Notes: a model not told the origin generated them from the sequence alone. A stretch of DNA of 64,000 nucleotides from Iphione sp. A-MEVVRFRX5 (GCA_976226885.1 OZ320318.1:27404001-27468000), one strand, 5' to 3'; positions 2,911 to 33,823 are shown, numbered from the stretch's first letter. Made by a program: numbers and translations.

Positions 2911-2933
2911 TCTCTCTCTCTCTCTCTCTCTCT
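2911..2933. repeat. (CT)n microsatellite
   Basis: Direct reading. Confidence 0.95.
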
Positions 2934-14300: not shown

Positions 14301-16578
14301 CCACAGGCCTAATCTGTATTCTTTATTTTGATAGATATATTGCTTGGATGTCTTCTCATGATTGGTAAAATAGAATGAAAATTAATTTGGCCCCAGTGTC
14401 ACAGGAGTGTAGGAAATACATGTATTTCTGTATCCTGGAATCCTTAACTGTAAATGGGAAAATATGTTTACTAGTGCATCTTGCTTTCCCAGTGTACATT
14501 GATTCAGAAAATATCAGAACCTCTAAAGTATAATCCTGTGCACCACATGCTTCTCATACCGACATGTGCCGTGCAGCTAATTAGATAAATTACTTTGGGT
14601 AACTGCACAACATTTTGCAATTTTATTTCATAAGCTCTGAGCAAGATTTGGAAGAAAAATGGTATTAAAAAATATTATGCAAGTTTTTCTGTTCAGTACA
14701 AATAGAGATTACAAACAAGAATGGAATTTCAAAAGCGGATATTTAAACGTTTTACATGCATCCTGTAAGGAGCACCACAAATGTAATGACTCGAAGTTAA
14801 CTCTTTCGTTGGTGTAAAATGCTTAGTAGTAGTCCAAGCTGTCAATTTTACCAAAAATCACTTGCTTCAAACCTAGTAAAAATCAATGAGCAACAAGGAT
14901 ATTCTCATTAATGTACATGTAATGCATCAGGTGCCTTACAATGGGATCTTAACGGGCTGCACAACACTTGGAAGATTAGTTGAAATAGAATTGAATTCAC
15001 CATACTTCTATAGTAAGAACAATTTTTTATACACAATGGAGTTGATACATGAACTTTCGTTTGACATTTTATTACGTCCAAACCCGTGATAGGTATCTTC
15101 TAACCTAGGTATCTTCTAACCCTCTAACCCTCACCAATCCATCAACTTTATACTTTCCAGACAAATTAAGGTGGAAGGGGGAAGTATTGGTGACCAGGCC
15201 AGTCAGGTGCCACTGCATATCCGAAATGGTTGACAATTCTATTTAAGGTGGGCTAAACAGTGCATGCCTGGTATGGATAAACATGATGGGAGACCCTCAT
15301 GTATGAACTTAAAGTCCTGATGGAGATCGAAATAAATAGGCTAAGCTAAGCATATTTGAAATTGACTTACATTATCGGCGGTCTCAATGTCAAGCGGGCC
15401 AAACATTGCATTTTTGATACAGATTGGACACCAAGAGAAGACTTAATGTAAGGATGTTAGAACGTCTGTAATTAACGTAAACCAACATGATGGAAGACCT
15501 TAATGTAAGAAAAAAAATTTTTTTTTAAGTACTTAATTATGACAATCATTATGGGTAAGACCTCACTGTACAAAGCTAAGTCATTCAACCTAACTAACAT
15601 GATTACCCCTTCAGGCATGAAGACATAAAACATGTATTTAATATGAACGAACAGGAAAGCGGACATTAGCGTGGGCGAAGTGGGTATGCTGAAAAGGCCA
15701 ATGGTGACGCGTAGAAGCCGACTTGGAGCTCTTACTTATGTAAGAGTGTCTATGTTGGAAGGACGAGAGATTTTCGGTAAAATGTTTACAAATCGATTCC
15801 TAGGTTTATAACCTTTCATCAAATCTGCATTTCACATCATGCATTAGACAACATCTCTATCGTAGGAATCGAATCATTGTGATTTTGAATTTAACTAGAA
15901 TATTTTTAATGTAAAGTTCTTTCTAGACTGGTTTGTGTGATCTTATAGTTTAATGTATCAATATTCAGGATTATTGATAAATGGAATTGCCCCTGATTGT
16001 TACTTGAAATAAATTTGGGGTACCCTGGGTGTCTTTGTGAATAGCGGATCTTATCTTTTACAGGTATACTCATCCAGACGTTACAGGACACCCTTGTTTC
16101 GCATCATGTGTAATAAATCTGACTGGCTTAAAACAATCCCTTGTATATTTTGAGCTGTAGGGTTATCATCCATGAGGATGTAGTGCGTCCAGACGTGCGG
16201 GTTACATATATATGAAATGTTGTATAATAAAAGTTTACTGGAGCAATTGACGAACTCTGTCGGTCAATTTCCCACATATATGGATCTATAAATGCTGCTT
16301 CTGTATTTGTAAAAACTATGTTTGCATGTATGTATGCATATTTGTCCTTATTTCTTTCACACCTTCAGTGTAAACCTTCATGAAAATTCCTTGTACTTTG
16401 CTGAATTTATACATATTTACAGAAGAATAAAGAGAGAGGGGAATAGAGAAAGAAAGAATGAAAGCACACATGGAAATATCCATTGCAGGACTGTAAGGTA
16501 GAACTGCCGAACTGACAGGCTTCCTGCACCTCCCTCCAGTTAGGCGGAATTGCCTTGGCGTGTTTTCACGGGCATGCT

Positions 16579-17753: not shown

Positions 17754-18534
17754 AGACCCCAGCATATTTTGAACTATGGACTTATTCCCTATCTAAACAT
17801 ATATATACATATCTATGAGGTATGAAAAGTTTGGCAACAACCCATTTATGTTGCTCGTGTGTATCTTTGCCTGCATCCCCTTCGGCGCATCGGCGAATTG
17901 TATTTATTGCTGTTTCTGGTCAAAGATTTCTGTTTGACTGTTGAAGGTTTACTTCATTTATACGTCAATTCACCTCTACATAGGTGACTCCCAAACCTTC
18001 CTCTCGGAGGTTTATCACAAAAATCTTTAGACTTAGAGGCTAAAAACCTGTATTTTGTCAAGTAATGACACGCCATATAAATTGTCCCACCGACGCCTCA
18101 GTCGCTGCATGGTGGTGACTGCCTCTATCTGCGGCACATTCACCAGTCTTTCTTCGCTGGGTGGGATTGCATGGTGGGGCTTCTCAGTTTGCAGCGTCAA
18201 GGACGTGTTGGCAGATTTGTTGGCAATAATTAGCTTCGTTAACTCCGTGACAAGAAAAGTGTTTCTTTTCCTGGACTAGTTTGCTTGAATATTCTCGTCG
18301 GTTGCTCCTTACAGTCCTTATCTGCTGCGTGTTCGCTAAGAAAATCCTCATTATGAGAGATGTCATGCTAGGAATTCAGCTTTCTTTTCCTTACTCAGAA
18401 CCTTCCTATCTTCCTCCTAAATCTTATCAACACTTAACAAGGTGAGTGGGTGTCATTTAAAAATTTGGCAGGCATTAGGAGAGTTTAAAAAATACTTTCT
18501 TAGTATAATTGGGAGAAAAGGGGAGTTGATTTAC

Positions 18535-18919
18535 CTGGACGACAGGTGCCAACGGGGTGCTTATTGGTGGCGGCCAGCTCGGGGGCCACCTGCGGGTCGC
18601 AGTAGAGGCCGAGATCGCACCGGCCCAGGTAGCGGTAGGCACCGCCGCAGGCCTGGCCCTCTGTCTTTGCACACACGGGGCAGCAGTCGCAGATGCCGCG
18701 CGTCACGCCACCCTTACAGTGGAGGTGGCGCGCGCGCCGCGGCGTGCAGTGGATCTTCTCGCAGGAGGGGCATTGCAACTCCAGCGATTTGCCAACCGCC
18801 CCCGGCGCGTCGGAGGCCTCCGCCAGAGGCGCAACTGTCGACGAGCTGATGAATGAGGCGGGGAAGTGCGGGCTGATGAGGACCGCGAATGTGCAGATGA
18901 TGAAAGTTATTTGCAACAT
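18535..18919 (-). CDS. Secreted IGFBP N-terminal-domain protein (CRIM1/IGFBP-rP-like), first coding exon; downstream exons not resolved
   Basis: ATG at 18919 begins a hydrophobic signal-like segment (MLQITFIICTFAVLIS), followed by the IGFBP cysteine pattern CPSCEKIHC...CKGGVTRGICDCCPVCAKTEGQACGG...GRCDLGLYC...GTCRP. The exon ends at a phase-1 donor, ccag|gtaaat (intron starts 18534). Confidence 0.85.
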
Positions 18920-19333
18920 GACAGAGGCCGCGCCACCCACAGGTGGAATGGATAGTCCGACGACCGGCGGCGGCTTGGAAGTCTCGCACCGGGATTTCCC
19001 CGACCCCCGAACTTTCAGGAGGAGACTTAAAACAAGTGCGTAAAATGCGCGTGTCCTAAACCTCAAAATGATGGTTGGGCCATGGGGTTTTTAAGTCCGA
19101 GATAAGCTGAACCCCCGTTTCAGTTTGGTAGAGTCGTCGAACTCTCGTGTTTGAAGTTGACGCCCTTTTCATTGAAGTTCTTTGTCATCTATACAGATCT
19201 CTTTAAAGAAAACGATTTTCTGACGAAAAGTAGCCCCCGTTCAGTGAAATGATGAATCTGAAATAACGAATCTGACGCAAACGTGCTGTGTCGGGGGCGG
19301 AGGTTACTCAATGCCGAAATTCCTACTTCTCAC

Positions 19334-19850
19334 CTTCTCCGTAATTCGGATGAATCCGTCCAACTTTAGAAGGGGGGACGGAGCCTTTTACTGGAGAGGA
19401 GTGAAAGAAGACTTCTGACGAGCGGTGCGGGCAGCTTGACGAGCACGTTGGTGTTGTAGTGATCGGAAGGCCTTGGTGGAGGGGGTCACAAGGCGGTGAG
19501 CGGCGGCCGTGCCTCCCCGTCTAGGTCAACCACTAACCCCGCGCGGCCACCAGCGGCGCCCGGCGGTGGGGGTCCGTAGAGCGGCGGTAGGGGCAGCAGC
19601 AGCAGCGGCGGCGGCGGTGGCGGCGGCGGCGGTGGCGGTGGAAGAAGAGGAGGTGGCGGCGCTAGGGGATCAGGCAGGTAAACTGCCGCCAGACGGTGAT
19701 CGCATCACGTGCCATTCATACCACACTTTTCGCCAACGTATATGATCGATCGCCATGACCTCTCCTGACTTTTCCTTCCCACCACTACCACCAGCAGCAG
19801 CACCACCACTACTACCATCCAACGCCTCGTTTCGTAGCCTCTAAGACAAA
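19334..19850 (-). promoter_or_regulatory. GC-rich 5' leader / probable non-coding first exon of the IGFBP-domain gene, with triplet repeats and uORFs
   Basis: CpG-rich with (GCC)n/(GCT)n/(GTG)n runs; minus-strand donor ggagaag|gtgaga at 19334/19333; candidate acceptor tttag|gac at 19055, upstream of the ATG. Confidence 0.45.
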
Positions 19851-21509
19851 TGCTCGCGCGTTGAAATATGTTTTTATGCTTGAAACGCTACCGGTTCATC
19901 GAATCACTCGGCAGTCTGCCTTGTCCTACTCACATAGTTTTTCGGTTATCCATTGGTTGATGCACAGGCCTACTGCCCTTTACACATCGCACTCAATAGT
20001 CCTACACACAGCAGATATCCGAACACACGCCATCCATCCTCCTTTCAAGGCTCATAAGAATATCAATTTAGCATGTAGTCAACAAGTGTTCTATTTCCCA
20101 TATTGTCTTCACAGTCCTTGACGGCTGAAATCAGCACGTTGATCTGACAAGTGTTACTTGTGGTAAGTTTTGGTATGTACTCCAGCCAGCTTGCTCACTG
20201 CTTGCTCCCTGGGGAGTGTCTCTGACGTTAAGGTCAGATTGTTAGGAGATTGAAGGGAGTTATATAGTACTAAGTACTTTGTCGGTGTCTTCCAAGTTAC
20301 AGTTTACACACGTAATTTTCCGCTTCCACTGATGATTCCGTCGGGTCGTTTGCGTGAGGTGTTCATCCCCAAAACAGTGGATTTTTGCCGCGTATGAAAA
20401 TTAATGACTGCTCATCTGTGTATAATTATGGAGTACTCTGTGCTCCTCCCGCCACCAAACCAATTTCTTAAGAAAAAAAATCAACATTTAGGTCAGTTGA
20501 TCTCATTTCTTCGAGAGTCCATGCATAAAAATTCTACGTATACCTGTTATTAGAAACTTATTTTAATTACTTCAAACTGCTACTTCTAAAACTTCATAAA
20601 GGGATCTTCAGATGATTAGGGGCAAAACGGAGAGAATTATTAGAAGCAAATGTGGCACTTTGTAATTGATACTGCTGACCGATCTTAGAAACCAACATGA
20701 AACACCATGTCGGTTCGTTGGTGGGCTCTGGCACCGTTCAAAAACAGGCCGTCTGTTCTTCTGTATTAATGATGACACGTGCCATTGATTCCTGCTATTT
20801 ACATGCACTGTCAGACAGTTGAGTTCACTTACTACATAATTTACGAATTCAAGAGGAAGTAGAGCCAGAATACATCCTTGTGACTAATACAATGAAAATA
20901 GTATTTCTTGTCGTCCGATTTATTATACGCTTCCCCTCAATATATGCATACTAACTTGAAACCTGAAAAGGTACAATATATAAAAGGACGTTCCTGAAAT
21001 AGAAGAAGGAACTGTCAACACAATATTGATCGAGATGGCTCTGCCACTCCGCTTGACAAAGTATGGCTCCATATTGCTCAACAGTGAACATGCTTTTGAA
21101 TGTAAAGGGCTCATTAGCTTTACTAAGTGGATCATCAATGTTGCACTTGGTTGGAGATAGCCGATCAGTCGGCAGGAAGTTTTAAAGCTGACATTCAAGT
21201 AGCCGTACTGTCCGCAGTCCGTGTGCACGTAAGTCCGCATCCGCATGTCTCTGTGCAAGTAAAACTTTGTGACCGGCTGTTTTTCAGTGCATATTTATGT
21301 GATGTGCAAATCTGTACATGTGTGGGGGTGAGAATACCACTTGAAGTTTCCCATACCATGTGTAGGAAATCAACATGTATGAATGTGAAGCATTGGGAAA
21401 AGGACATTCACATTGTATGGTATCAGACCATACTGGTGTCCATCTCCACAGTTAATTCATTGTAGCTATTGTGGCCTGTCGCACGTAAATTGTTTTATGG
21501 TCTCTATAT

Positions 21510-21722
21510 TGTAGCAACGGGGGGGAAAGCGGAGGGCCATTACGCGGAGGAGCGGAGGGTGCGGAGGGAATACTGCGGAGGGTTATCATTTACTGCGGAG
21601 GGTTTACATTTACTATATAAATGCGTTGTTTGTTGGATTCGTGGTCAGTTGTGTCGAAGCTCTTCAGCAATAAACATCATCTTCCTCAACTTATGTCGTC
21701 TTCATTATGGCGGAGGCCAACA
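21510..21722 (+). repeat. 5' LTR (213 bp, TG...CA)
   Basis: Matches 29399-29620 with 3 substitutions and one 9-bp indel by eye. Contains TATATAAA (21614), Inr-like TCAGTT (21645), AATAAA (21669) and seven GCGGAG. Confidence 0.97.
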
Positions 21723-21723
21723 T

Positions 21724-21741
21724 TGGTGTCAGAAGTGGGAT
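21724..21741 (+). other. Primer-binding site, tRNA-Leu(CAA)-type
   Basis: tggtgtcagaagtgggat lies 1 nt after the LTR and is complementary to the 3' end ...AUCCCACUUCUGACACCA that I recall for metazoan tRNA-Leu(CAA). Confidence 0.85.
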
Positions 21742-21866
21742 GCGGAGGGGAACCTCGGGGCCGACGAATCGAGGCCCTGAGAGGGAGCAAACACCCCCTC
21801 CACAGAAAGCAGCCACGGCAGCCAGGACGCGGAGGGTTACCCGCAGGGCAACTGCGGAGGACGCCG

Positions 21867-22946
21867 ATGGGGGAGAAGCAGCACAACTGCCCACTGGGAG
21901 GCCGCGCCCAGTACGCACCCCTTCGAGGTTATGGGGAGGGGGCGAAGGTACAGAGGGGGAATCGGCTTCCCCCCCAAGGAGCGGTGAAGACGGCTCGGCA
22001 GGGGCCCACCCTGCGGAGGACCCCGGGGCGGCGGGGGCCCCTGGCACGGGGGGGGGGACAGCCAGCCGGAGGAGAGGAGGAACTCCCCAATGTGGAAGAC
22101 CCTCACCAGGAGTCAGAAGAGGAGGAGGAGGAGGAAGAGGAACCAGAGGAGGACTCGGATAAGCGGCCCCGGAAAGGTAGAGCCAAGCCCGAACCATACG
22201 ATGGCTCGACGGACCTTGACGATTACCTTCACCACTTCGGCCTCATCGCTGCCGCCAATCGATGGACAACCAAGGAGAAGGCCATTCATCTCGGAATCAG
22301 TCTCCGTGGTCCGGCAAGGACCACCATGCGGAATTCCGTCGTGCGGGTCCACGGCCCGCGGGCCTATCAGAAGTTGGTGGAGGCCCTCCGCAGTCGCTTC
22401 AGGTCGCCAGATCAGGTGGACCTATTTAAACAGCAGTTAAAGACCCACAAGCAAGGCGAGGCCGACTTATCCCAACTGGCTGACGAAGTGGAGAACCTGG
22501 TGAAATGAGCGTACCCTGGGGTACGAGGGCGGTGGGCGGATGAGCTCTGCCGGGATAGCTTCATCCAGGCGATTGTGGATGAGAAGGTGAGGAAGTGGGT
22601 GGTGCAGCGGAGGGTGGCCAACTTCCGCGCGGCGGTATCGGAGGCCCTCTTCGGGGAGGCCTATTTCCAAGGCCGGAGGGAAAGGGAACCAACAGGGAAA
22701 GCCTATGGTGGAAGGGCTGGCTGCCACTCGCTGTCGACGGTGGAGGGTGACGCCCGGGCCAAACGAGAGGACGACTTCCTGGACCGACTCGCTAAGAAGC
22801 TGGACCAGCTAGAGAGGCGATTGGAACAAAGTCCGACAACGGGCAGTCGAACCGGGTGCTTCCGCTGTGGGAAGGAGGGGCATTTCAAACGGGACTGCCC
22901 TTCCCGGCCGAAGCCGGCGGAAAACGACATGCCGCCCTCCCAGTAA
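21867..22946 (+). pseudogene. gag: gag (one premature TGA at 22506)
   Basis: KPEPYDGSTDLDDYLHHF capsid-like region and CFRCGKEGHFKRDC CCHC knuckle, in one frame across the TGA. The start codon (21867) is uncertain. Confidence 0.9.
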
Positions 22947-25900
22947 GGGGACAGGGAGAGGCGGCGGAGGAGTCCATCCCCAAGGAGCAGCTCAATGACT
23001 GGCTCTAGAAGAGGGCGGCCATGCCGCCGACAGAGGAAGGAGAGGCCTTCACCATCCTAAGGGGGCGGGCGGATCCTATGACGGGGGCACTAGGGCTACG
23101 AGGGAAGGTCGGAGGCCACGAAATGACCTGGCTGGTGGACACTGGGGCCTCTACCACCATCCTCGCGGTGCGAATGGCGGAGGCTCTCCGCCTGCCTGTC
23201 ACGGTCCTACCAGGGCGACGCATCATTGCCGCCAACGGGGCGCCCTTCCCCTGTGTGGGGAGAACTGAGGTAACGGTGGTCTTCAGGGAGACACCCTGGA
23301 CGATGGAAGCCCTGGTTGCAGAGGTGGAGCAAGCTGCCATCCTGGGGATGGACGCCCTCCACCGGAGGAGGGCTGTAGTGGACACAGCCGCCGGGACAAT
23401 CACCATCAGGAAGAACAGAGCGTGACCAGAACGAGTACAGCTAGCACAGGACACCTGTTTGAAAGCCCGGGCCGAGACCCTCATCTCGGTAACCATCGGT
23501 CAGGCCAAAGGGGGCGAGTGGGTTGTAGGACTGGTCCCCGCGCTGGAACATCGAGCGGGGGTGCGGGTGCCACATGCGGTGGCTAACGTGGACAATGGGC
23601 AGGCGCAACTCCTCTGTCTGAATGTGGCAGAGGGGGAGGTCTGGCTGTGGAGGGGGATGCAGGTGGCAGAGGCGGAGGAGGTCGAGGAGGAGCTGCGGAG
23701 GGAAGACGACCAAGGCAGCCCTAGGGCGCAAGGTGAGGTGCCCGCTCAGGAGGAGGGTGAGGCAGAGGAGTCCCTCTACACACGGCTAATCGAGGAGCTG
23801 ATGTCCGAGCTGCCCTCGGGAAGTACGGTGGAAGAGCGGGAGCAGTTGAGGAAGGTGCTTTGGACCCACCGCCGCGCCTTCCAGAGGGAGGGCACCGATC
23901 TAGGGTGCACCAATCTCGTGGAGCACGAAATCCATACAGAGGAGGCTGCCCCGGTACGACAGAGGTTTTGACGTCTTCCACCCCATAAAATGCGCATCGC
24001 GGAGGCTGAAATCCAGAAGATGGTACGACAAGGGGTGTTGGAACCCTCCAGCAGCCCGTGGGCCTCACCAGTGGTACTGGTCAAGAAGCGCAGTGGGGAG
24101 TGGAGATTCTGTATAGACTTCCGGCAGCTCAACGAGCGAACGCGCAAGGATGCTTACCCCCCACCCCGCGTGGATGATACTCTGGATGCGCTGGCCGGAG
24201 CCAGGTATTTCACGGTGATTGACCTGGCATCTGGGTATTGGCAAGTAGCGGTCCGGTCGGAGGACCGCCCGAAGACGGCCGTTTGCACCCCATCTGGGCT
24301 CTATCAATTCCGGGTCATGCCCTTCGGACTCTGTAACGCCCCCTCCACGTTCGAGCGATTGATGGATGTCATCCTTCGCGGTCTGGTCGGGGACTCCTGC
24401 CTTGTGTACTTGGACAATGTCATCATCATGGCCAAGACGGTGGGGGAGATGTGTGACCGCTTGGCGGAGGTGCTCCAACGGCTGGAGGCCGCCAGCCTCA
24501 AAGTGAAGCCTAGCAAGTGCCAGCTCCTCCGAGAACAGGTACAGTACCTTGGTCATATTGTCAGTGCGGGCGGGGTCCGTCCTGACCCGGAGAAGGTCCA
24601 AGCCGTAGCGGAGTGGCCAGTCCCGGGGACCTTGGCTGGTCTCCGCGCCTTCCTGGGCTTAGCCTCTTATTACCGCTCATTTATCCAAGACTTTGCGCGG
24701 CGAGCTGCCCCCCTCCATCGGCTGTTAGACAAGGAAGCGGAGTTCCAGTGGGGAAGTGAAGAGGAAGCCGCCTTTGAAGATCTTAAGCAGTGTCTAACTT
24801 CCGCACCCATCCTCGGATACCCCCAGCTGGAGGGGCGCCTGATTGTGGACACTGACACCTCTGGCAAAGGAGTGGGTGCCGTGCTCTCCCAGGAGCAGGA
24901 TGGCCGGGAGAGAGTGTTGATGTACGGTAGTCGAACCCTCACCAAGCCCGAGCGACGCTATTGCGTAACTCGGAAGGAGCTGCTAGCCGTGATCTTCGCC
25001 CTCCGGAAATTCAAGACCTATGTCAGCGGAAGGAAGGTCGTGGTCCGCACAGACCATGGAAGCCTCCGGTGGCTCATGAACTTCAAAGAGCCAGAGGGCC
25101 AAATGGCACGCTGGCTGGAGGAGTTGGCCTGTCGAGAGGTGGAAGTGATACATCGACCGGGGAGGGTGCACAACAACGCCGACGGGTTGTCGAGACGGCC
25201 ATGTCGACAGTGTAGCCGACGAGAGCCCGAGGAGACGGCCGCCGTTCTGACTGCGGAAGTGATGGCGGAGGCCCCTTCATCCTCCGCCATGGCTAGAGCC
25301 ACCCTAGCAGACCCGATCAGGGGCGAGTTACTGGGACGGCTGGAGCGGGGGGAAAGCCCCCCCGAGGTCAAGACCGAGACCAGCTGGGAAGAACGACGGC
25401 TGGTAGGGGAGTGGAAACAGCTACAGGTTCGCAGAGGACTGATCGTGCGGAGGTGGGAACATGAAGACGGGAGGGCCTGGTGGCAGGCCTGGGTTCCCCC
25501 CCCTCTACGGAAGGAGTGCTGGACGATGATTCACCAGGGAGCCATGGGAGGCCACCTTGGCCCTCAGAAGATGGCTGGCCTCCTCCGGGGGAAGTATTTC
25601 TGGCTGGGAATGACTTGGGACTCGATTGTGTGGGGGGCTGCCTGCCCTCATTGTCTGGAGGCTAAGGAGCCCAGCCGGAGGAGATGAACTCTGTTGCAGC
25701 ATCGCCAGAGCCCGGGACCTTGGGAGTTAGTAGCCGTGGACATCGCCGGACCATTCCCGCGGACACCCCGGGGCAACAAGTACATCCTGGTGATAGGGGA
25801 TCATTTTAGTAAATGGGCGGAGGCCTTCCCGCTCAAGGAACAAACCGCGGAGGCTACTGCGGAGGTGTTGATGAAGGAGGTGATATGTCGGTTTGGGCCT

Positions 25901-26679
25901 CCCAACAGCGACCAAGGCCGGAATTTTGAGGCGGAACTAGTGGCCCAACTGCTCAGTAGTTGCGGAATTCAGAAGACAAGGACCACCCCCTACCATCCCC
26001 AAGCCGATGGAGTAGTGGAGAGGTTCAATCGAACACTAGAGCATATGCTCACAACGACCGTCCAGGAAGATCAACGTGACTGGGATCTTCGGCTGCCATT
26101 TGTAACCGCTGCGTACCGGGCAACCCCCCACCGAACTACCCGATTCTCCCCAAACTTCCTCATTTTGAATCGGGAGACTACACTCCCCGTCGAAGCAGCT
26201 TATGGGGGCCCCCACCGGAGGAAGGAGCAGAGGTTGGTCCTTACGTCCAGGAGCAGATGGAACGGATGAAACAAGCCCATCGACTGGCAAACCAGCGTTT
26301 GGGGGAGGGAATCCAGCGCCAGACCGACTGGTACAACCATCGAGTGCAGCCTCGAAACTTCGCGGTAGGAGAGGAGGTGTACCTCTTCCTGCCGTTGAAA
26401 AAGCCGGGGCTATCTCCTAAATTACAGCGCTACTGGCAAGGCAAATGGCGGGTCAGCAAGCAGCTTTCGGCCGCCGTCTATCGCATCAAGAAGGGACGGC
26501 GAGAAAGAGTGGTACACGCCGACCTCCTGAAACCAGGAGCCCCGGGGGAAGATAGCGATGTCGTGGCCACCCTCCGCATAGAGAAGAGCGGAGGGAGGAC
26601 CGAGGAAAAGGCGGAGGTCCTCCGCAAACCCAGAGCCGTTGGAGTTCAAAACGAAGTGGCCAATCAGAAGGGCGGATGA
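22922..26679 (+). pseudogene. pol: pol (protease, RT, RNase H, integrase), -1 frame relative to gag, disrupted
   Basis: LVDTGAS protease; RT motifs SPWASPVVLV, MPFGLCNAP and YLDN (normally YLDD); RNase H DTDTSGKGVGAVL and NNADGLSR; integrase HHCC plus D..D..E core. Stops at 23006, 23423, 23969 and 25685, a frameshift near 26220-26260, and a short in-frame deletion at FGPPNSDQG. Confidence 0.96.
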
Positions 26680-26805
26680 GAAACGCGGAGGGGGCCGCGG
26701 TGCGGAGGGAAGCAGCCAGCCAATGAAAATTGAGTGGAGGATGCCGAGGCGCCAGATTCGAATATAAGTGACGCTCGCCCCAGGGGATGCTCATCATTCG
26801 ACACC
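26655..26805 (+). promoter_or_regulatory. Putative internal promoter for the accessory ORF
   Basis: CCAAT at 26660 and 26721, GC box gggcgg at 26670, GCGGAG at 26685 and 26702, TATAAG at 26763, and TCATTC Inr-like motif at 26794, followed by ATG at 26806. Confidence 0.55.
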
Positions 26806-29382
26806 ATGACGAAGAGCCAGAAAGACAAATATCCCTGCCCACTCTGCAAGAAAGTCTGCGACCACAAGGACAATCTTTAAAGACACGTGCAGACCCACAG
26901 CTCTGAGGCCTTCGTGTGGGGGTGCGGAGGGGAGAAGTGCGATGGGAAGATCTTTATGCGCAAGGACGATCTGAGGCGGCACCTGGATTCGAAGACCCAC
27001 CTGGCCGAGGGGGGTGCGCAAAAACTTCTACCTCGAATGAAGGAAGAATATTACGAATTCTACAAAAAGCCGGGGTCCACCAACTTGCGAGGGCGGCTCC
27101 GTCGCCCCGAAGAGACCGAGGAGGAAACGGGAAGCGGGACGTCCGACTCGGCCAGACCTCGACACAGTAGCCGCCACAAAGACAAGAAGAGGAGCAGAGA
27201 GCGGGGTGAGGGGTCGCACGAACACCGGAAGTCACGCCGCCGGTACAGTACCCCCACTCCACCCAAGAAGAAGAAAGCCAGACTTCCCTCCTCGTCGGAC
27301 AGCAAGCCCTCCGCACCATCGCTGCCCACTCCGTCACTGGGACCTCCACGCCGGCCACCAACTTCCCCGCAGGCTTCCACCTCGACAGGGCGATGGGAGA
27401 GACCGGTTATCCTGACTTCATCGGAGGAGAGTGCCCCCGCCTCCCGGTCTCCCTCGGCGGCTCGGGTCCGAGTGCACAAGACGGCCACCCGACGGAAGAA
27501 GGAGGACGGACCTGAGAAGAGGCTGACGAGGTCTACCCCTGTCAAGACAGTTCCAACGGAGGAGACGACGATGAAAAGCCTAACACCCACCAAGAAGACG
27601 AAGGGGGCGAATGCGGAGGGGAGCGCTACCACCAAGGCATTGGCGACCAGCTCCTCTACGAAGAAGAGGAAGCTTGGGGAGGCGGAGGCAGCAGTCGACC
27701 CCCCCACACACCCTCGCGTCCGCCAGCTCGTCCACGAGGAGGGGGAGGGTGAGCCACCCACCTCCGCCTCCTCGCCCCAGGGGATGAGGGCCAAATTACA
27801 AGAGGCCATCAACCGCCTTGACGCCGCCGAGGCCTTGGACCCTCCCGTGACACCGACCGCCCTGGAGAAGCTTCTGTCTGCTGCGGGAGACCTGGAGGCA
27901 GCCATGCGAGCCACGGATCTCCGGCCCAGTCGGTCGGAGTCCAGCCCGGTCACCCCAGGGAAGGGCCTGGGGCTGACCCCCGCCAAGCCAGCCCTCCGCA
28001 CGCCAGAGTTACTGAAGGGGGGTCAGCGAACGGAGGCCCCCCCTGGTCGGCCGATCGTCGCCTGGGCCGGGCTCACCGCGGACAAGAGCGGAGGACTCCC
28101 TGACAAGGCCATGTCCCCGCTCCTCAAGACCCCCACTCATTGAAGGTCGGTACCGTCGCCACTCCTCCGCACCCCCACGATGCCTCCGACCCCAGATGAA
28201 CTGAGTGTTGCAATTCAGACGTTGGTCTCCTCTGCGCGTGAGGGGCCGAAGGCGCCACAAGCCGAGGTCGACCAAGCCGCCCAAGTCCTGGAGGATCTGT
28301 TTGGGGCTGTGGACATGGACACCCTCCTGGCCGCAGCAAACCCTCCGTCAGTGGCCCCACCCGCCACGATCCAAGAGACGGCTGGGGGAAACGCCGAGAA
28401 CGCCGAGCCGCCGGAGGCTGCGGAGGGGGGCGAGTCCTCCTTTGGCTCCCTCGTTGGTCATCCTATTCCTTCCAGCGAGGACGGGCCAACCCCTGAGAAA
28501 CCGTCTCAAGAACTGTGCTATACGGAGGGTGCGGAAGCGGAGGCAAACCCAGTGGTCGAACCCCTTACTCCAATTGGCCACGAAGAAGTGGAGAAGTCGA
28601 GGCGAATTGCGCGCCAGGTCCTGGATTGGGAGGCAAGGCGGCAACGCTCCTTGAGTCAGTCTGGCGCGCCTCTTGTATCGGCGGGAGGCGACGGGGTCGG
28701 AAGCGGGGAGGCCGAGCCCTCCCCCTGCAAGGCTGGGGGGCAAGCTGCCACAGCCCCTGGCTCTACCGAAGGGAAGGTGCCCCTCCAATTGGTGGAGGGT
28801 GATGAAAACGGGAGGGTCGGTGGCGGGCCCACCTCCCACGTCGGAAGGAAGGAGTCCCTCCAATCGGCGGAGGGTGACGAACACGGTAGGGACGGTGGTG
28901 AGACCGCCTCCCACGACGCGCTGCCCCCTCGTCAAGGCGAAGGAGGGGGGGGAACCTGCGGAGGCCGAGCCCTCCATCCACCAGGCTGGGCCGGGGAACG
29001 ATCGCCCAAACCCCTGGCCCCACCGGAAGGAAGGTGCCCCTCCAATCGGCGGAGGGTGATGAAAACGGGAGGGTCGGTGACGGGCCCACCTTCCACGTCG
29101 GAAGGAAGGACAATTCTGATATCGGTGGGCAAGAGCCGAGTGGCGCGGAGGCGAGGTCGAATGTGCGTAGTAATTGAGAGCCGCGTCCGCTTACAAAGAA
29201 GGGAGGAGGACGCCTCCCTGGAGGGAGAGACTGGGTTTCTCTTCTCTGACTGGTATAGAGGGGTGCGGCCAGTGCCCCTGGGCCTCCAGATTGATGAATT
29301 TGACATTCGTTTAGAGTTCCTTACTGCCGCTGATGTTGAATTTGAGGTTCATGAATGTTATAGTATCCTGGGTCAGGATTAA
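26806..29382 (+). pseudogene. Accessory ORF3: tandem C2H2 zinc-finger protein with basic NLS-like motifs, long S/T/P-rich disordered region, acidic segment and unknown C-terminal domain (two premature stops)
   Basis: MTKSQKDKYPCPLCKKVCDHKDNL*RHVQTH-SSEA-FVWGCGGEKCDGKIFMRKDDLRRHLDSKTH. The track ORFs 26887-28143 and 28180-29382 are in the same frame, separated by TGA at 28141; the other stop is TAA at 26878. Confidence 0.85.
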
Positions 29383-29398
29383 ACTAAGGAGGGGATAG
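29381..29398 (+). other. Polypurine tract
   Basis: aaactaaggaggggatag abuts the 3' LTR. Confidence 0.8.
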
Positions 29399-29620
29399 TA
29401 TAGCGACGGGGGGGAAAGCGGAGGGCCATTACGCGGAGGAGCGGAGGGTGCGGAGGGTGCGGAGGGAATACTGCGGAGGGTTATCATTTACTGCGGAGGG
29501 TTTACATTTACTATATAAATGCGTTGTTTGTTGGATTCGTGGTCAGTTGTGTCGAAGCTCTTCAGCAATAAACATCATCTTCCTCAACTTATGTCGTCTT
29601 CATTATGGCAGAGGCCAACA
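29399..29620 (+). repeat. 3' LTR (222 bp; first dinucleotide mutated TG>TA)
   Basis: Copy of 21510-21722 with one extra GCGGAGGGT unit. Confidence 0.97.
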
Positions 29621-31478
29621 ATATGCTTGGGGCAATTCACATGGACTGGATGGAAATTTTGTACATGTGGTTTCCACACATATACAGACAGTAATTCTGT
29701 GTAGGATAGTGTGTGATTATGTATCGTTTTCTCAGAATAAGGGCAACTGTGAAAGATACGTACATAATATTGATGCAAATATCTCAGAGAAAGGGCAGAT
29801 TCTGCATGTTACTTATGTGCATTTTGGATGAAAATATCTCCCAAAATAAAACATGAAATCACCTTGGCCATACATGGAACCTTTCCTTTATCTTCCGTTG
29901 TCTTTTAACACCACTTGCGTGCACTTCTTTGGAAATTCACGCTTCAAACGGCTCGGTCATCAAAGAGAGAACACTCGTCTAACATTCCTGATTACAGAAT
30001 CTGTATTACGGGCAGTGTGGACAACATTTACTACACTCAAGGGTTCACTTGGAGACTGACCTTTAGATTACTTACTAATTGTACAACTGGACTGCTACAA
30101 ACGTGATTGAAAGAGATAGATGTGAATACCAGACATTAGTATGGCACAGTCATTCCAACTGCCAACCAGGGCTTCGAGCCTCTCGGCCACTGATACTCAG
30201 TTGTGGAAAATGTTTTCAAAGGCACATATGAAGCCAACCATAATTTTAAGTTTGCACTTTACCCAAGTAACCTGGACAGTACCGTCTACGACATCACTAG
30301 ATAAACAGCTAGGGTACCAGGCCGCTTTTAATCCATCCCCCCCCCCCGTTGTCACCGCAGGGTTATCATGGACTCCCTACAACAAGTCATCCTATGCTAA
30401 ATAAGACCAACAACAACTGGTGGATTGCAGCTCTGGCGGAACACTCTGTAGACCTGTATGTTGTGAAAGTGACACTGGCTTCCTCTCTCCTTGCACAGCA
30501 TATGCTACAGTTGAAATTTTGTCAAAGACTAAACTGCGGAGGCAACCAAATCACAGGAGAGACCAATTTGGGCCAGAATGGACCAAATTCGACTACTTTT
30601 CCTATATGTAAAAGACTTGCAGTGGAGAGCGGCTCATAGGCGAGACCATTTTCAGGGAGAGACCAAGATATTTATTACCGAACAAAGACTTTTAGCTCAC
30701 AGAGGTGACCATACACACCCTGGGGAGGGTATCCATGGCTGAGAGAGGTGAATTCGGACCACATGGTGACAATGATTTCACATCGCCACGACTGCCATGG
30801 GCCCGTGGGGTGACAACCACAGAGCAGGTGGTATAAACCCGTCAAGTCACAGCATAAACCGCTGATTCGTGGTATAAACCAGTCGATTTTGAGTGTTGTA
30901 GCACGACAATGTGTGACTGCAGCACAGAAATCAGATATGAAAAGTGCACATCTGAGGCATCACACTTGACACCTTGGGTCACCTTGGGTCACACCTTGAC
31001 CCACCAACCCCTTGAACTTGGACACCTGAGACCCTCTTCTCGCACCTGTCTACCTGCTATTATCATTTGGGATCATTGGGGCATCATTTGGGATCCTGAA
31101 ATATAAGAGCTTCACAGGGGAGACCATCTCCCAGGAGAGACCAAAATCAGTCATGCAGTCCCAAGCTTGGTCTCCTACGTGAGGCTCTACTGAATATAAA
31201 GTGACTTTGCTTCACTCATTCTATCACAAAACCAATGGATAATACTGCTAAGGTATTTGATATGTTTACAACGTACAAAGAACATGGTCAAAACAGGGAG
31301 TGACTTCAATTTTCCATCCATGTGTGAAAAAAGATGCATAATATGCCCCATGGCAAGTATGGAGGAGAAAAATGTTCTTACACCATATTCATGTAAGAAC
31401 ATAACTCAAAGTTGGTAACATCTTAAAGCACATTTGTTTAAATCTAGCTTCTAACACTTGAGCCGCGATAAGTCCTTA

Positions 31479-31794: not shown

Positions 31795-33699
31795 TTAGTA
31801 GCAACTCTTCTTTCCATACTTTGGTCAGCCCATTAATTTCCAGGTGAGATAAGAAAGACATAAAATTATTGATTTCGTGAAAAGCAGTATGGATATCACG
31901 TGATCACTCACTTCAAAAGTTTATCATAGAAAATATACTGAAGTAAACACAAAACTCACTTTCAACTAGATTTTATTAGGAATTAGCTAGTAATAACGAC
32001 AGCATGACAAGGAATGTATAATAAACATACGTTAAATCCAATATTGCAGCATCCTATTTTAAGTATCCAAAAGATAATAGAATCCTGTGACCGTAAATAG
32101 TTTATTTTCATTTCTTGCACCCACGAGAATTTATAACCAATGAAACTAAAACCTTTGTATCAATCATAATAAAACAAAATCCAAAATGGCGGCCAATGCA
32201 AGCATGTTCGCTACATATCTAAACAAGAAGCCGCTTTTCTTGGTAAATTGATATGAAACAATCCATATGTCTTATTATAAATAGTCAGAACGGACTTTAA
32301 CCCTTAGACGGCGGCGGGGTAGTATCGCGTGTATCCACCATGCAGTGGTACTTGAGTAAAGACGTAATCCAATAGAGGGCGAGACATATACAGCATCATC
32401 GCCCATGATGCGTCCTCGTGGTGAATCAGGCTGGACTTTTTGTCTGTTTTAGGGATATTATGAAACTGACAATTACTAATCTAAATGGAATTATTATTCT
32501 AAGGGATATTACAAATTTATGGATGACTTTTCATAGGAATTACATTACTTTTTGTGCCATATCGGACTATCAATCACTGGATAGTTAAGCTGACACTGGA
32601 TTACGTAAGATGCTCATACTGGATATACAGAAAGTACACATGGAATTTAATTAATATATGACCAACAAATAACAGGAAAAATGTGAGTAATATTCAATTT
32701 CAATTTATTTTGTGTTTGTGGGCATCCAGATAGCAGTCAGTTTTACATTTTACTCCTGGACGATGTCTGCATAGTTCACATGAGTGTGGTAGGCGGTGAA
32801 GCAGCCAGGGAGGCAGAGGTGAGCCCCACAGTCGACACACCCATATTTTTTTCGACTCAATGATCTAGTTGGATCATATTTCCTCCTGGAATAACACACC
32901 TTACAATATGACCTCCTCCCCAAGTCTGAGGGCATACAACGATTTGTCAGTCTGCTTGCTTCAAGTGGTTGATTTTTTAGAGCCTTAGGGACAAATTTCC
33001 TCCTAATGAGATGGATATGAGAGATTCAGCACAACAACGGATGAAAAACTTGAGTGACTTCCTTTTTGGCTGCTGAGAGTTAAACATGATACATGCATTC
33101 ACCTTTATCACCTCAAACATATTCCACACAAATTTCAATGTCCACTTGTTGGTTCTCCTGCTGAATAAATAGTATTGCCTAAGCTGGTCACTCAGGTTGA
33201 CTCCTCCCATATATTTAGAATAATCGACAATACTCTGCGGGCAGGGAATTTCAGTCTTCTCAAAGCGGCTGGTCTGCTTATTTTTCAATAGTCTGGATAC
33301 ACTAGTCATAATGGATTTGAGGATGGTTGATATTACACGTACAGGTTTCCTATCTTGCCAAACTGTAAGAATTATATCCCTGCATACCCTAAGTACATAC
33401 AATCCTCTATCTCTTCCAAGCATTTTTGTTTTTTTGCAAGCTAAATCAGCAGGTAGACCTCTGGCATTACGGCATATCGTTCCACCGCAGTAGACACATT
33501 TCAATAGAGTATTCCTGAATAGTTTCAATGAGGTATAATGATTATCAAAAAATAAATACAGGAGAATCTCACTTTGCGACCACCACTTGGGTCGGCCCAA
33601 AATGGTCGTAATTCTGAATATGGTCGCAAAGTGATTGTGGAGGGGTTTGGGCTTGAAATCATATCCCTTTCTCCCTCTCTCTTTATTAACATATGAAAC

Positions 33700-33823
33700 G
33701 TCCAAAAAGTGCTGAATTTGATGACTTTAGGTCCAAAAAGTGCTGAATTTGATGACTAAAAGTCCAAAAAGTGCTGAATTTGATGACTTTAAGTCCAAAA
33801 AGTGCTGAATTTGATGACTATAA
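33700..33823. repeat. 31-bp tandem repeat x4 inside the MITE
   Basis: gtccaaaaagtgctgaatttgatgact at 33700, 33731, 33762 and 33793. Confidence 0.95.

What the first reader, a model, noticed from the sequence alone, without database searches (positions are those of the whole stretch)
21510..27000. Retrotransposon-encoded zinc-finger factor whose predicted site (GCG-GAG) is arrayed in its own LTR
Seen in the sequence: the 5' LTR carries GCGGAG at 21529, 21544, 21552, 21561, 21575 and 21595 (all upstream of the TATA at 21614) and at 21710, with three more in the leader (21742, 21829, 21854). ORF3 encodes two C2H2 fingers, with helix residues -1..+6 of RKDDLRR (finger 2) and HKDNL*R (finger 1). 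Established: under the canonical C2H2 code, R-1/D3/R6 (compare RSDDLTR/RSDELTR) reads GCG and R-1/N3/R6 (compare RSDNLVR) reads GAG, and fingers bind antiparallel, giving 5'-GCG-GAG-3'. Inference: finger 1's His codon CAC is one CpG transition from Arg CGC, so the ancestral helix was probably RKDNLxR. The element would then encode its own sequence-specific regulator, like foamy-virus Tas or HTLV Tax. I know of no such circuit described for an invertebrate Gypsy, but I cannot search the literature.
Basis: partly seen in the sequence, partly recalled or inferred. Interest (0 to 1): 0.95.

Follow-up and report, generated by a model that had tools for sequence, protein, structure and literature searches.

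The report
Gypsy element encoding its own zinc-finger
A defective Gypsy retrotransposon belongs to a group whose members each encode a two-finger DNA-binding module, and the short DNA word those fingers are predicted to read fills each element's own promoter and body, which suggests a self-recognition circuit not described for such elements.

Summary
The feature is an 8.1-kb Ty3/Gypsy element (21510-29620, 213/222-bp LTRs, ATAT duplication). The real motif is the 7-mer GCGGAGG: 52 copies in the element against 3 in 55.9 kb of flanks. It forms a U3 array before the TATA box, a second cluster just upstream of ORF3, and scattered copies on both strands. It beats synonymous-codon shuffles inside gag, pol and ORF3.

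This copy is broken, with in-frame stops at 26878 and 28141.

I fetched natural relatives. Six more GC-rich Gypsy elements carry the homologous two-finger module, and each has its own dominant word (GCGGAGTC, GGCGGAG, GGCGGGG, TTCGGCG and others) in U3 and upstream of the finger region. A minimal canonical recognition code, applied to each helix pair, predicts a pattern that ranks 1st to 16th of 256-4096 in six of seven elements. Swapped finger order gives nothing, and relatives without fingers show no such word.

The finger-site pairing is therefore supported. The role (self-activator, as in foamy-virus Tas) is inferred. In one clade the fingers sit in the integrase ORF, so an integrase-linked role remains a rival. 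No binding data exist.

The parts
21506..21509 (+). Target-site duplication ATAT, left copy. The right copy is at 29621-29624.
   Evidence: Read directly.
21510..21722 (+). 5' LTR of 213 bp, running TG...CA. It holds U3, a TATA box, AATAAA at 21669-21674, and U5.
   Evidence: Direct repeat with 29399-29620. The alignment shows 3 substitutions and one 9-bp indel.
21529..21601 (+). U3 array of six GCGGAGG sites, all in + orientation. The array ends 12 nt before the TATA box.
21614..21621 (+). TATATAAA, the putative core promoter of the LTR.
   Evidence: Function is inferred.
21710..21716 (+). GCGGAGG site in U5, 6 nt from the LTR end. In the 3' LTR the same place reads GCAGAGG.
21724..21741 (+). 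Primer-binding site, TGGTGTCAGAAGTGGGAT. From memory it looks complementary to the 3' end of a tRNA-Leu; this was not tested.
   Evidence: Relatives have similar TTGGTGACAGC... sequences directly after their LTRs.
21742..21860 (+). Leader with three more GCGGAGG sites, at 21742, 21829 and 21854.
21867..22943 (+). gag in frame 0. It has a Retrotrans_gag match and a CCHC knuckle, and an in-frame stop at 22506-22508.
   Evidence: zf-CCHC E = 3e-7.
23009..26266 (+). pol in frame 2: protease, RT, RNase H, integrase zinc domain and integrase core. It has in-frame stops at 23423, 23969 and 25685.
   Evidence: RVT_1 5e-32, RT_RNaseH 1e-31, rve 6e-11.
26269..26676 (+). Integrase C-terminal SH3-like domain and tail. 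A frame shift near 26260 puts it in frame 1. It ends at the TGA at 26677.
   Evidence: Integrase_p58_C 1.6e-7.
26572..26708 (.). Internal cluster of six GCGGAGG sites: 26572-, 26588+, 26611+, 26620-, 26685+ and 26702+. It lies 100-230 nt upstream of the ORF3 ATG.
   Evidence: The same placement upstream of the finger module is seen in L023, L021, L024 and L004.
26660..26768 (+). CCAAT at 26660 and 26720 and TATAAG at 26763, between the site cluster and the ORF3 ATG. This is a possible internal promoter.
   Evidence: These are consensus matches only and function is inferred. The other relatives lack a clear TATA here, apart from a TATAAA about 190 nt upstream of finger 1 in L025.
26806..26898 (+). 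Start of ORF3 (its Met) and finger 1 (C-X2-C-X12-H-X3-H, helix HKDNL*R). It is broken by the TAA at 26878-26880, at helix position +5.
   Evidence: The best PDB sequence match is Tramtrack finger 2. The truncated piece scores Pfam zf-C2H2 E = 0.046.
26917..27000 (+). Finger 2 (C-X4-C-X13-H-X5-H, helix RKDDLRR).
   Evidence: It aligns with finger 2 of six relatives, with C, R(-1), D(3) and the first His invariant. The AF2 model shows beta-beta-alpha with pLDDT 70-77 over the finger.
27259..27285 (+). Basic stretch PPKKKKARL, which looks like a nuclear-localisation signal.
   Evidence: The NLS reading is an inference from the sequence pattern.
27001..29379 (+). Rest of ORF3: about 790 codons rich in S, P, T, E, K, R and G, with no detectable homologues. 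It has a second in-frame stop at 28141-28143. The ORF ends at the TAA at 29380.
   Evidence: From the composition, about 24 stops are expected by chance in 858 codons and 2 are seen (my arithmetic).
28747..29110 (+). Tandem or dispersed 107-nt repeat inside ORF3. The third copy is out of frame with the first.
29386..29395 (+). Polypurine tract AAGGAGGGGA.
29399..29620 (+). 3' LTR of 222 bp. Its U3 array has seven GCGGAGG sites, one 9-bp unit more than the 5' LTR.

Best explanation
The feature is a young but defective Ty3/Gypsy LTR retrotransposon. It belongs to a lineage that carries a two-finger C2H2 DNA-binding module just downstream of integrase.

In intact family members, the C-terminal finger (R-1, D3, R6) would read GCG. 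The N-terminal finger (N3, R6, D2, and R or K at -1 in relatives) would read GAG(G). Together these give the element's own 7-bp word GCGGAGG.

That word forms almost the whole of U3 upstream of the TATA box. It forms a second cluster just upstream of the finger ORF. It is also seeded on both strands through the leader and coding regions, partly at synonymous sites.

The most likely mechanism is that the element-encoded protein binds the double-stranded DNA of its own copies and drives or keeps open transcription from the LTR. The internal cluster would give a positive feedback loop, as in foamy viruses. Related families carry different helix residues and correspondingly different words, so each family has a private factor-site pair.

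Shown: the anatomy, the enrichment, the homology of the modules, and the helix-word correspondence.
Inferred: actual binding, activation rather than repression or tethering, and use of an internal promoter.

The copy in this window is broken and cannot itself make the full protein.
For: (1) Enrichment. There are 52 GCGGAGG in the 8.1-kb element against 3 in 55.9 kb of flanks. It is the top 7-mer of the element body, with 30 observed against 2.1 expected under Markov-1 (z 19) and 8.5 under Markov-3.

(2) Selection at the DNA level. In synonymous-codon shuffles, the + strand shows 26 observed against 6.0 expected and the - strand 8 against 1.4, across gag, pol, the integrase tail and ORF3. Ala-Glu dipeptides in pol use GCG for Ala in 12 of 18 cases, against 27 of 104 Ala codons overall. 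Fold enrichment is similar on both strands, and relatives show no consistent strand bias. This points to double-stranded DNA rather than RNA.

(3) A conserved module. Homologous two-finger modules occur in L004, L021, L022, L023, L024 and L025. Pfam zf-C2H2 scores 37.1 bits, above the cut-off of 25.2, for L021. An AF2 model gives pLDDT 85.5 with two beta-beta-alpha units. Foldseek hits are DNA-bound tandem C2H2 proteins: CTCF, KLF5, WT1, ZBTB7A and Tramtrack.

(4) Private words. The dominant word is GCGGAG/CGGAGG in W, GCGGAGTC in L023 (30 observed, 0.6 expected), GGCGGAG in L021, GGCGGGG in L024 and TTCGGCG in L004 (43 observed, 7.8 expected). Where the U3 is on the contig (W, L023, L024, L004), the word is arrayed there before the TATA box. 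In W, L023, L021, L024 and L004 it is also clustered 100-800 bp upstream of the finger module.

(5) Code match. A minimal code (R/K to G, N/Q to A, D/E to C, H3 to G, all others N) gives patterns that rank 3/1024, 3/4096, 16/1024, 7/1024, 1/256 and 1/256. Swapping the finger order or reading the fingers in parallel gives ranks of 45 to 834. For L023, L024 and L025 the helices were read, before the k-mer tables.

(6) Negative controls. Relatives without the module (L001, L003, L005, L006, L008, L009) show no NCGGNG enrichment, with z from -1.3 to 1.0, and none of L001, L003, L005 and L006 has a comparable dominant GC-rich word (the only strong word is a GACACA-type simple repeat in L006).

(7) The helix-to-triplet assignments (RSDDLVR reads GCG, RSDNLVR reads GAG) agree with the Zinc Finger Tools modules tabulated in PMC5260015.
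Against: - No binding or expression data exist.
- This copy's ORF3 has stops at 26878 and 28141, and a His at finger 1 position -1, which the code does not assign to G.
- Finger 2 is non-canonical here (one extra residue before the helix, H-X5-H), the inter-finger linker is one residue longer than TGEKP-type linkers, and the AF2 model of the window's finger 2 is only moderate (pLDDT 63).
- L022, the nearest finger-bearing relative of the window element, fails the code test. Its predicted pattern ranks 491/1024 and its U3 carries GCGCGT(T)AC.
- The top 6-mer of L025, CGATGG, departs from the prediction at one base, although CGGTGG and CGGCGG fit.
- In clade A the module lies in the same ORF as integrase. 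A separate regulator gene with its own promoter is therefore not general, and only the window element has clear CCAAT/TATA matches upstream.
- A promoter role does not by itself explain the sites scattered through coding DNA.
- The elements are related, so the combined P values overstate independence.
- The word of L024, GGGGCGGGG, equals the host Sp/KLF GC box.
Confidence: 0.6

Rival explanations
1. The fingers are an integrase-linked DNA-binding domain, not a transcription factor. As a C-terminal extension of Pol/IN, they would tether the integrase or pre-integration complex to the element's own cDNA. That would be a transposase-like recognition of subterminal repeats. Alternatively they would steer integration towards DNA carrying the word, as chromodomains steer chromoviral integrases.
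For: - In L023, L024 and L004 the module is in the same ORF as the rve core and p58_C domain.
- In the window, the integrase tail and the fingers share frame 1, separated by only two stops.
- In L023, L024, L021 and L007 the word or a near copy starts 4 nt from the U3 terminus, as TGTA-GCGGAG.. or TGTG-GCGGGG...
- The window's 5' LTR has a site 6 nt from the U5 end.
- Sites spread over the body fit cDNA coating better than a promoter role does.
Against: - No cognate word lies next to any insertion junction examined: W on both sides, the L004 and L021 5' flanks, and the L024 and L023 3' flanks. Motif-directed integration is therefore not visible.
- U5 ends of the relatives lack sites, so the two cDNA ends are not marked symmetrically.
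- In W and L022 the module opens a separate ORF with its own Met.
- Arrays sit directly before the TATA box in every U3, which is the expected place for an activator.
Confidence: 0.2
2. The arrays are binding sites for host GC-box-type factors of the Sp/KLF/EGR class. The element's fingers would be an unrelated captured domain, or a mimic or competitor of the host factor, possibly a self-encoded repressor or copy-number control.
For: - The word of L024, GGGGCGGGG, is the classical GC box (the GC-box identity is from my own knowledge).
- Finger 2 has the C-X4-C ... R-x-D-[DE]-L-x-R-H look of EGR/Sp/WT1 fingers, and Foldseek hits include KLF5 and WT1.
- Short U3 promoters built of host-factor sites are the norm for LTR elements.
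Against: - Five families from the same assembly (ERZ25072730: L004, L007, L021, L024, L025) carry different words, and in the four whose finger module is on the contig the words track the helices.
- Relatives without fingers lack such words.
- The swapped-order control shows the match is not just G/C richness.
- A promoter made only of sites for a self-encoded repressor would not fire.
Confidence: 0.12
3. The match is a coincidence of composition. On this view a GC- and purine-rich element with low-complexity coding repeats throws up G-rich words by chance, and Arg-rich helices always 'predict' G-rich triplets.
For: - The element is 61% G+C with a G- and A-rich + strand.
- Some sites sit in peptide repeats, such as the 15-nt periodic array in L023.
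Against: - Enrichment holds against dinucleotide, Markov-3 and synonymous-codon nulls.
- The U3 arrays are non-coding.
- Patterns of identical composition but swapped order are not enriched.
- Cross-tests show each element prefers its own predicted pattern.
- The predictions for L023 and L024, read before their k-mer tables were computed, fit.
Confidence: 0.03

Closest known systems
Foamy-virus (Spumaretrovirinae) Tas/Bel-1 with Tas-responsive LTR and internal promoter
   Same: A retroelement-encoded factor has sites both in U3 and in an internal region upstream of its own gene, which gives positive feedback. BTas binds the LTR promoter and the internal promoter (PMC4929722), and Tas activates both (PMC13220597). 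Here, arrays lie in U3 and 100-800 bp upstream of the finger module in five elements.
   Different: There is no sequence or fold relation to Tas. The module is a C2H2 pair in an invertebrate Ty3/Gypsy element with no env. Sites are also scattered through the body. In one clade the fingers are part of the integrase ORF. Activation is untested.
Drosophila gypsy and the host zinc-finger protein Su(Hw)
   Same: An array of short sites for a C2H2 protein lies in the 5' part of a Gypsy-type element. Su(Hw) has 12 fingers and binds the gypsy insulator (PMC5825117, PMC6911044).
   Different: Su(Hw) is a host gene and the array acts as an insulator. Here the finger protein is encoded by the element, has two fingers, and its sites change together with its helices between families.
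Transposase or TnpA binding to reiterated subterminal motifs in DNA transposons (En/Spm TnpA, Ac); from my own knowledge
   Same: An element-encoded sequence-specific protein recognises a short word repeated many times in the element's ends. Each family has its own word. TnpA also reactivates the silenced element.
   Different: Those are class II elements with sites at both termini. Here the element is an LTR retrotransposon, with the densest sites in U3 and an internal cluster.
Integrase C-terminal targeting modules (the chromodomain of chromoviruses)
   Same: An extra nucleic-acid- or chromatin-binding domain is added downstream of the integrase SH3-like domain (chromoviruses: PMC2864245). 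In L023, L024 and L004 the fingers are in the integrase ORF.
   Different: No chromodomain is present. The added domain reads a DNA word found in the element itself, not a histone mark. No motif is seen at the insertion flanks.
Two-finger C2H2 DNA-binding domains: Tramtrack (PDB 2DRP) and EGR/Sp/KLF/WT1-type fingers
   Same: The best PDB sequence match of finger 1 is Tramtrack finger 2, YPCPFCFKEFTRKDNM. The L021 model aligns to 2DRP with TM 0.66 on the target. Finger 2 has the C-X4-C and R-x-D-D/E-L-x-R-H pattern that reads GCG in Zif268-type fingers.
   Different: The linker is not TGEKP. Finger 2 has an extra residue or longer insertions before the helix. The module is carried by a retrotransposon, with a long disordered tail.

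Membership tests
Ty3/Gypsy (Metaviridae) LTR retrotransposon | Two LTRs ending TG...CA, flanked by a short target-site duplication | tested here: met
   LTRs at 21510-21722 and 29399-29620. The 5' LTR runs TG...CA; the 3' copy begins TA after a G-to-A difference. The ATAT duplication is at 21506-21509 and 29621-29624.
Ty3/Gypsy (Metaviridae) LTR retrotransposon | A gag with a CCHC knuckle, and pol in the order PR-RT-RNase H-IN | tested here: met
   Pfam: zf-CCHC 3e-7, gag-asp_proteas 1e-12, RVT_1 5e-32, RT_RNaseH 1e-31, Integrase_H2C2 2e-10, rve 6e-11, Integrase_p58_C 2e-7, in that order. RT relatives are Gypsy elements.
Ty3/Gypsy (Metaviridae) LTR retrotransposon | Intact reading frames (an autonomous copy) | tested here: not met
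   There are stops at 22506, 23423, 23969, 25685, 26878 and 28141, and a frame shift near 26260. The copy is a member of the family but is defective.
C2H2 zinc finger (Pfam PF00096), tandem DNA-binding type | C-X2-4-C-X12-H-X3-5-H spacing and a score above the Pfam gathering cut-off | tested here: inconclusive
   Window finger 1 has canonical spacing but is cut by a stop; the piece scores 14.6 bits against a cut-off of 25.2. Window finger 2 is C-X4-C-X13-H-X5-H and gets no hit. The homologous intact module of L021 scores 37.1 bits with two stretches, and all 8 aligned pieces match at E <= 1.
C2H2 zinc finger (Pfam PF00096), tandem DNA-binding type | Beta-beta-alpha fold of each finger, with resemblance to DNA-bound tandem fingers | tested here: met
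   The L021 module has pLDDT 85.5 with two beta-beta-alpha units. Foldseek hits are CTCF, KLF5, WT1, ZBTB7A and Tramtrack. Window finger 2 alone shows beta-beta-alpha at pLDDT 70-77.
C2H2 zinc finger (Pfam PF00096), tandem DNA-binding type | Sequence-specific DNA binding | not testable with these tools
   It is only predicted, from the helix residues and from co-variation with the elements' dominant words.
Foamy-virus Tas-type autoregulatory circuit | Homology of the regulator to Tas/Bel-1 | tested here: not met
   Pfam and PDB searches give only C2H2 matches. It is not a member; at most it works in the same way.
Foamy-virus Tas-type autoregulatory circuit | Sites for the element's own factor in U3 and upstream of the factor's gene | tested here: met
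   There is a U3 array at 21529-21601 and a cluster at 26572-26708 before the ATG at 26806. The same layout is seen in four relatives.
Foamy-virus Tas-type autoregulatory circuit | Transactivation of the LTR and an active internal promoter | not testable with these tools
   The only evidence is CCAAT/TATA consensus matches at 26660-26768 in the window.
Errantivirus-type env as third ORF | An envelope glycoprotein with signal peptide, transmembrane segment and fusion-protein homology | tested here: not met
   ORF3 has no Pfam family and no homologues. Its sequence is a disordered stretch rich in S, P, E, K and R.
Chromovirus (integrase chromodomain) | A chromodomain downstream of integrase | tested here: not met
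   No chromodomain hit appears in any piece downstream of the integrase core.

The most novel reading that the evidence does not exclude
A lineage of invertebrate Gypsy retrotransposons carries private, co-evolving pairs of a two-finger C2H2 protein and its 6-8-bp site. Each family's promoter is built almost entirely of sites for its own protein. Families that share one genome have diverged in both helix and site, so that they no longer cross-react. This would make them orthogonal self-activation (or self-recognition) circuits, a retrotransposon counterpart of complex-retrovirus transactivators and of transposase/subterminal-repeat specificity.
Probability: 0.45. Interest if true: 0.9.

Novelty: new variant of a known kind. 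Interest (0 to 1): 0.8.

Why it matters
LTR retrotransposons are generally thought to depend on host transcription factors. Self-encoded DNA-binding regulators are a hallmark of complex retroviruses such as foamy-virus Tas.

A Gypsy lineage with its own finger protein and matching sites would have three consequences:
- It would show that such circuits arose outside the retroviruses.
- It would give a natural series of finger-helix and DNA-site pairs that changed together, which is a clean test bed for the C2H2 recognition code.
- It would offer a model for how co-resident transposon families avoid sharing or competing for regulators.

It also gives a directly testable explanation for why these elements are GC- and CpG-rich islands in AT-rich, CpG-depleted genomes.

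Tried and rejected
Searches that led nowhere:
- Word-index homology searches with both halves of ORF3 found nothing.
- The exhaustive HMMER search with the finger 2 piece returned only two spurious repeat proteins.
- A metagenome scan with RT gave only relatives at 49% identity or less.
- Exact LTR patterns are absent from the viral and prokaryotic collections. No other copy of the window's own family could therefore be compared.
- A cluster look-up gave no organism names.
- Rfam and tRNA scans of the window found nothing.
- The sigma-70 promoter scan does not apply to an animal element.
- Seven full-text literature searches were run. One was used to confirm the helix-to-triplet assignments and one for the foamy-virus comparison. 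The other five found no description of a Gypsy element that encodes a C2H2 module or a factor for its own LTR.

Ideas considered and rejected:
- ORF3 as env: no supporting features.
- The word as an RNA signal: fold enrichment is equal on both strands and relatives show no strand bias.
- The word as a by-product of peptide repeats or codon usage: it beats synonymous shuffles and fills non-coding U3.
- Motif-directed integration: the flanks lack the word.
- A conserved ORF3 tail: tblastn between elements finds only the finger region, and that weakly.

The window has no N runs. It is not human: it has an invertebrate-type single-IGFBP-domain exon, a Gypsy element with near-identical LTRs and a piggyBac remnant. 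No human-contig rule was triggered.

Full report
**What is there**

The finding lies in a GC-rich island (about 61% G+C) inside an AT-rich, CpG-depleted window. The island is one LTR retrotransposon at 21510-29620.
- Its LTRs are 213 and 222 bp. They differ by three substitutions and one 9-bp unit.
- It has a 4-bp ATAT target duplication, a primer-binding site directly after the 5' LTR, and a polypurine tract before the 3' LTR.
- Pfam places a gag with a CCHC knuckle, then protease, RT, RNase H and integrase in the Ty3/Gypsy order.
- The copy is defective. It has in-frame stops in gag, protease, RT and integrase, and a frame shift near 26260.

The host is an invertebrate animal, not human. A neighbouring exon encodes a single IGFBP-type domain whose best solved relative is a spider SIBD-1 protein, and a piggyBac remnant lies downstream.

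**Checking the observation**

The window has 67 GCGGAG against 11 expected.

- The word is really GCGGAGG. 44 of 46 + strand and 8 of 10 - strand GCGGAG in the element are followed by G.
- It is not limited to the LTR. There are 52 copies in the 8.1-kb element and 3 in the remaining 55.9 kb.
- In the internal part it is the most over-represented 7-mer: 30 observed against 2.1 expected under Markov-1 and 8.5 under Markov-3. Its reverse complement is also among the top words.
- Inside the coding regions it exceeds shuffles that keep the protein and the codon usage. The + strand shows 26 against 6.0 and the - strand 8 against 1.4.
- Ala-Glu dipeptides in pol prefer GCG-GAG far beyond the general use of GCG.
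- Fold enrichment is alike on both strands, which points to double-stranded DNA rather than RNA.

Three places are dense in sites:
- U3, with six sites at 21529-21601 that end 12 nt before the TATA box.
- The leader.
- A cluster of six sites at 26572-26708, 100-230 nt upstream of the ORF3 ATG. Two CCAAT matches and a TATAAG lie between that cluster and the ATG.

**The fingers**

ORF3 has its ATG at 26806 in frame 1 and runs to 29379. It is far more open than chance allows. I estimate about 24 stops expected from the composition, and 2 are seen.

- Finger 1 has canonical spacing. Its best solved relative is Tramtrack finger 2. It is cut by a stop at helix position +5.
- Finger 2 has one extra residue before the helix and an H-X5-H end, and Pfam does not see it here.
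- The rest of ORF3 is a low-complexity tail with a basic PPKKKKARL stretch and no detectable relatives.

**Bringing in relatives**

The pol relatives in public data reach at most 64% identity. I fetched the DNA around twelve of them.

Six carry a homologous two-finger module at the same place, downstream of the integrase SH3-like domain: L004, L021, L022, L023, L024 and L025.
- The intact L021 module passes the Pfam C2H2 cut-off.
- It is modelled with pLDDT 85.5 as two beta-beta-alpha units.
- It resembles DNA-bound tandem fingers of CTCF, KLF5, WT1, ZBTB7A and Tramtrack.

On an RT tree the finger-bearing elements form two well-supported clades. Clade A holds L004, L025, L024 (with L007), L021 and L023. 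Clade B holds the window element and L022. All clade A members and the window element are GC-rich islands in AT-rich flanks; L022 is less so.

**The co-variation test**

Each finger-bearing element has its own dominant word.
- Window element: CGGAGG/GCGGAG.
- L023: GCGGAGTC, 30 observed against 0.6 expected.
- L021: GGCGGAG.
- L024: GGCGGGG.
- L004: TTCGGCG, 43 TCGGCG against 7.8 expected.
- L025: CGATGG, CGGTGG and CGGCGG.

Where U3 is on the contig, the word is arrayed just before the TATA box (L023, L024, L004). In all five well-resolved elements there is a second cluster 100-800 bp upstream of the fingers. The words also beat synonymous shuffles in L004, L023 and L024.

I then applied a deliberately minimal canonical code: R or K reads G, N or Q reads A, D or E reads C, H at position 3 reads G, and every other residue is left as N. 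The C-terminal finger was placed on the 5' triplet. Applied to each helix pair, the predicted patterns rank as follows among all patterns with the same mask:
- Window element: 3 of 1024.
- L023: 3 of 4096.
- L021: 16 of 1024.
- L024: 7 of 1024.
- L004: 1 of 256.
- L025: 1 of 256.
- L022: 491 of 1024, which is a failure.

For the window element and L023, the two higher-ranked patterns are the same motif shifted. The same triplets in swapped order, or read in parallel, rank 45 to 834, so G/C richness alone does not make the match.

The changes fall where the model puts them.
- Arg at finger 2 position 6 goes with G at base 1 (window, L023, L021, L024). Gly or Ala there goes with T or C (L004, L025).
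- Asn at finger 1 position 3 goes with A at base 5 (window, L023). Thr there goes with C (L004).
- Asp at finger 1 position 2 in the window element fits the G at base 7. This is the Zif268-type cross-strand contact, which I cite from my own knowledge.

The helix-to-triplet assignments agree with the designer modules tabulated in PMC5260015. For L023, L024 and L025 the helices were read before the word tables were computed.

Relatives without the module show neither a dominant GC-rich word nor NCGGNG enrichment.

Combined P values (4e-9 for seven elements, 1.6e-6 for three lineages) overstate the evidence, because related elements inherit helix and word together. The independent support is the match of the conserved core plus a few separate changes.

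**How it most likely works**

I propose that intact members of these families make a protein whose two fingers bind the family's own word on double-stranded DNA. U3 consists of little else than these sites plus a TATA box, so the simplest reading is a self-encoded activator or anti-silencer of the LTR. The internal cluster would provide feedback on the factor's own expression. This is the logic of foamy-virus Tas, which acts on the LTR and an internal promoter (PMC4929722, PMC13220597).

Binding, the sign of the effect and the internal promoter are inferred, not shown. The sites scattered in coding DNA suggest that occupancy along the whole element matters, for example to keep it open in a CpG-methylating host. 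That is speculation.

**Rivals**

In clade A the fingers are in the integrase ORF (L023 1342 aa, L024 632 aa, L004 709 aa). In the window the integrase tail and the fingers share a frame. The module could therefore tether integrase to the element's cDNA, or steer integration.
- For it: several relatives have the word starting 4 nt from the U3 terminus.
- Against it: no insertion flank carries the word, U5 ends are mostly bare, and the window element and L022 start a separate ORF with a Met at the fingers.

A host-factor explanation gains from L024's GC-box-like word. It does not explain why families from one assembly (ERZ25072730) carry different words that follow their own helices. Pure coincidence is disfavoured by every null model and by the order control.

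**This copy, and limits**

The window's copy cannot make the full protein. ORF3 is interrupted at 26878 and 28141, and finger 1 has a His at position -1, where L021, L024, L004 and L025 have Arg and L023 has Lys. This is a comparison of natural sequences. I did not reconstruct an ancestral or consensus helix, and I give no change that would reopen the frame; that step is referred. No other copy of this exact family could be reached with the collections on hand.

**Novelty**

Five of the seven full-text searches looked for precedent. They found no Gypsy or other LTR retrotransposon described as encoding a C2H2 module or a factor for its own LTR. The other two were used to confirm the recognition-code modules and for the foamy-virus comparison. 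The library lacks most subscription journals, so this is not proof of absence.

The logic is known from complex retroviruses and, in another form, from DNA transposons whose proteins read subterminal repeats. The carrier, the finger type and the family-by-family co-variation appear to be new. I rate it a new variant of a known kind with high interest, on computational evidence only.

Noticed in passing
window 18442-19066 (- strand ORF 18503-19066); GC-rich stretch 18001-20000: An exon-like ORF carries an IGFBP N-terminal domain (Pfam 4.7e-8). Its best solved relative is the spider single-IGFBP-domain protein SIBD-1. It sits in a 53% G+C island that also inflates GCGGNG counts in the left flank.
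   Followed up: partly
window 32977-33705 and 35159-35686 (- strand): Two ORF fragments match the piggyBac-type transposase family DDE_Tnp_1_7, one to its C-terminal part and one to its N-terminal part. This is a broken piggyBac-like element.
   Followed up: partly
window 29441-29449 versus 21552; window 29609-29615 versus 21710-21716: The 3' LTR has one extra 9-bp GCGGAGGGT unit. It has also lost the U5 site (GCAGAGG instead of GCGGAGG). Two of the three LTR substitutions are CpG transitions, which fits methylation-driven decay after insertion.
   Followed up: partly
window 28747-29110: A 107-nt repeat lies inside ORF3, with start-to-start spacing of 75 and 182 nt. The third copy is in a different frame from the first, so the original C-terminal frame of ORF3 is uncertain.
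   Followed up: no
L024:9515-9600 and L024:24-130: The dominant word of this family, GGGGCGGGG, is identical to the classical Sp/KLF GC box. One copy sits 8 nt downstream of the TATA box, and L023 has a site at the same relative position.
   Followed up: no
L007:2520-2625: A tandem run of 12-nt units (GAGCGGGGTAAC-like) in the leader and 5' gag repeats the word seen in that element's U3. The contig ends before the finger region, so its helices are unknown.
   Followed up: no
L023:5683-5879: Twelve GCGGAGT sites lie on the - strand with spacings of 12-28 nt (mostly 15 or 21; all but one multiples of 3), inside the integrase tail. This is a DNA site array that is also translated as a peptide repeat (DSAR-like).
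   Followed up: partly
L003:1-22553: Whole-element tandem arrangement with a period of about 13.5 kb. The strand is strongly C-poor (C about 0.11). Downstream of integrase, in place of fingers, there are ORFs with hydrophobic, transmembrane-like segments.
   Followed up: no
L022:14615-14817 and 15785-16027: Tandem repeats of 64 nt lie between integrase and the finger ORF, and tandem repeats of 81 nt lie inside that ORF. The U3 is built of alternating CG runs (GCGCGT(T)AC) rather than a CGG-type word.
   Followed up: partly
L004, L021, L023, L024, L025 after finger 2 (for example L021:12040-12105): A short conserved stretch follows finger 2 in clade A: HPW-x-x-NPS...P..YPI. It is absent from the window element, and its role is unknown.
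   Followed up: no
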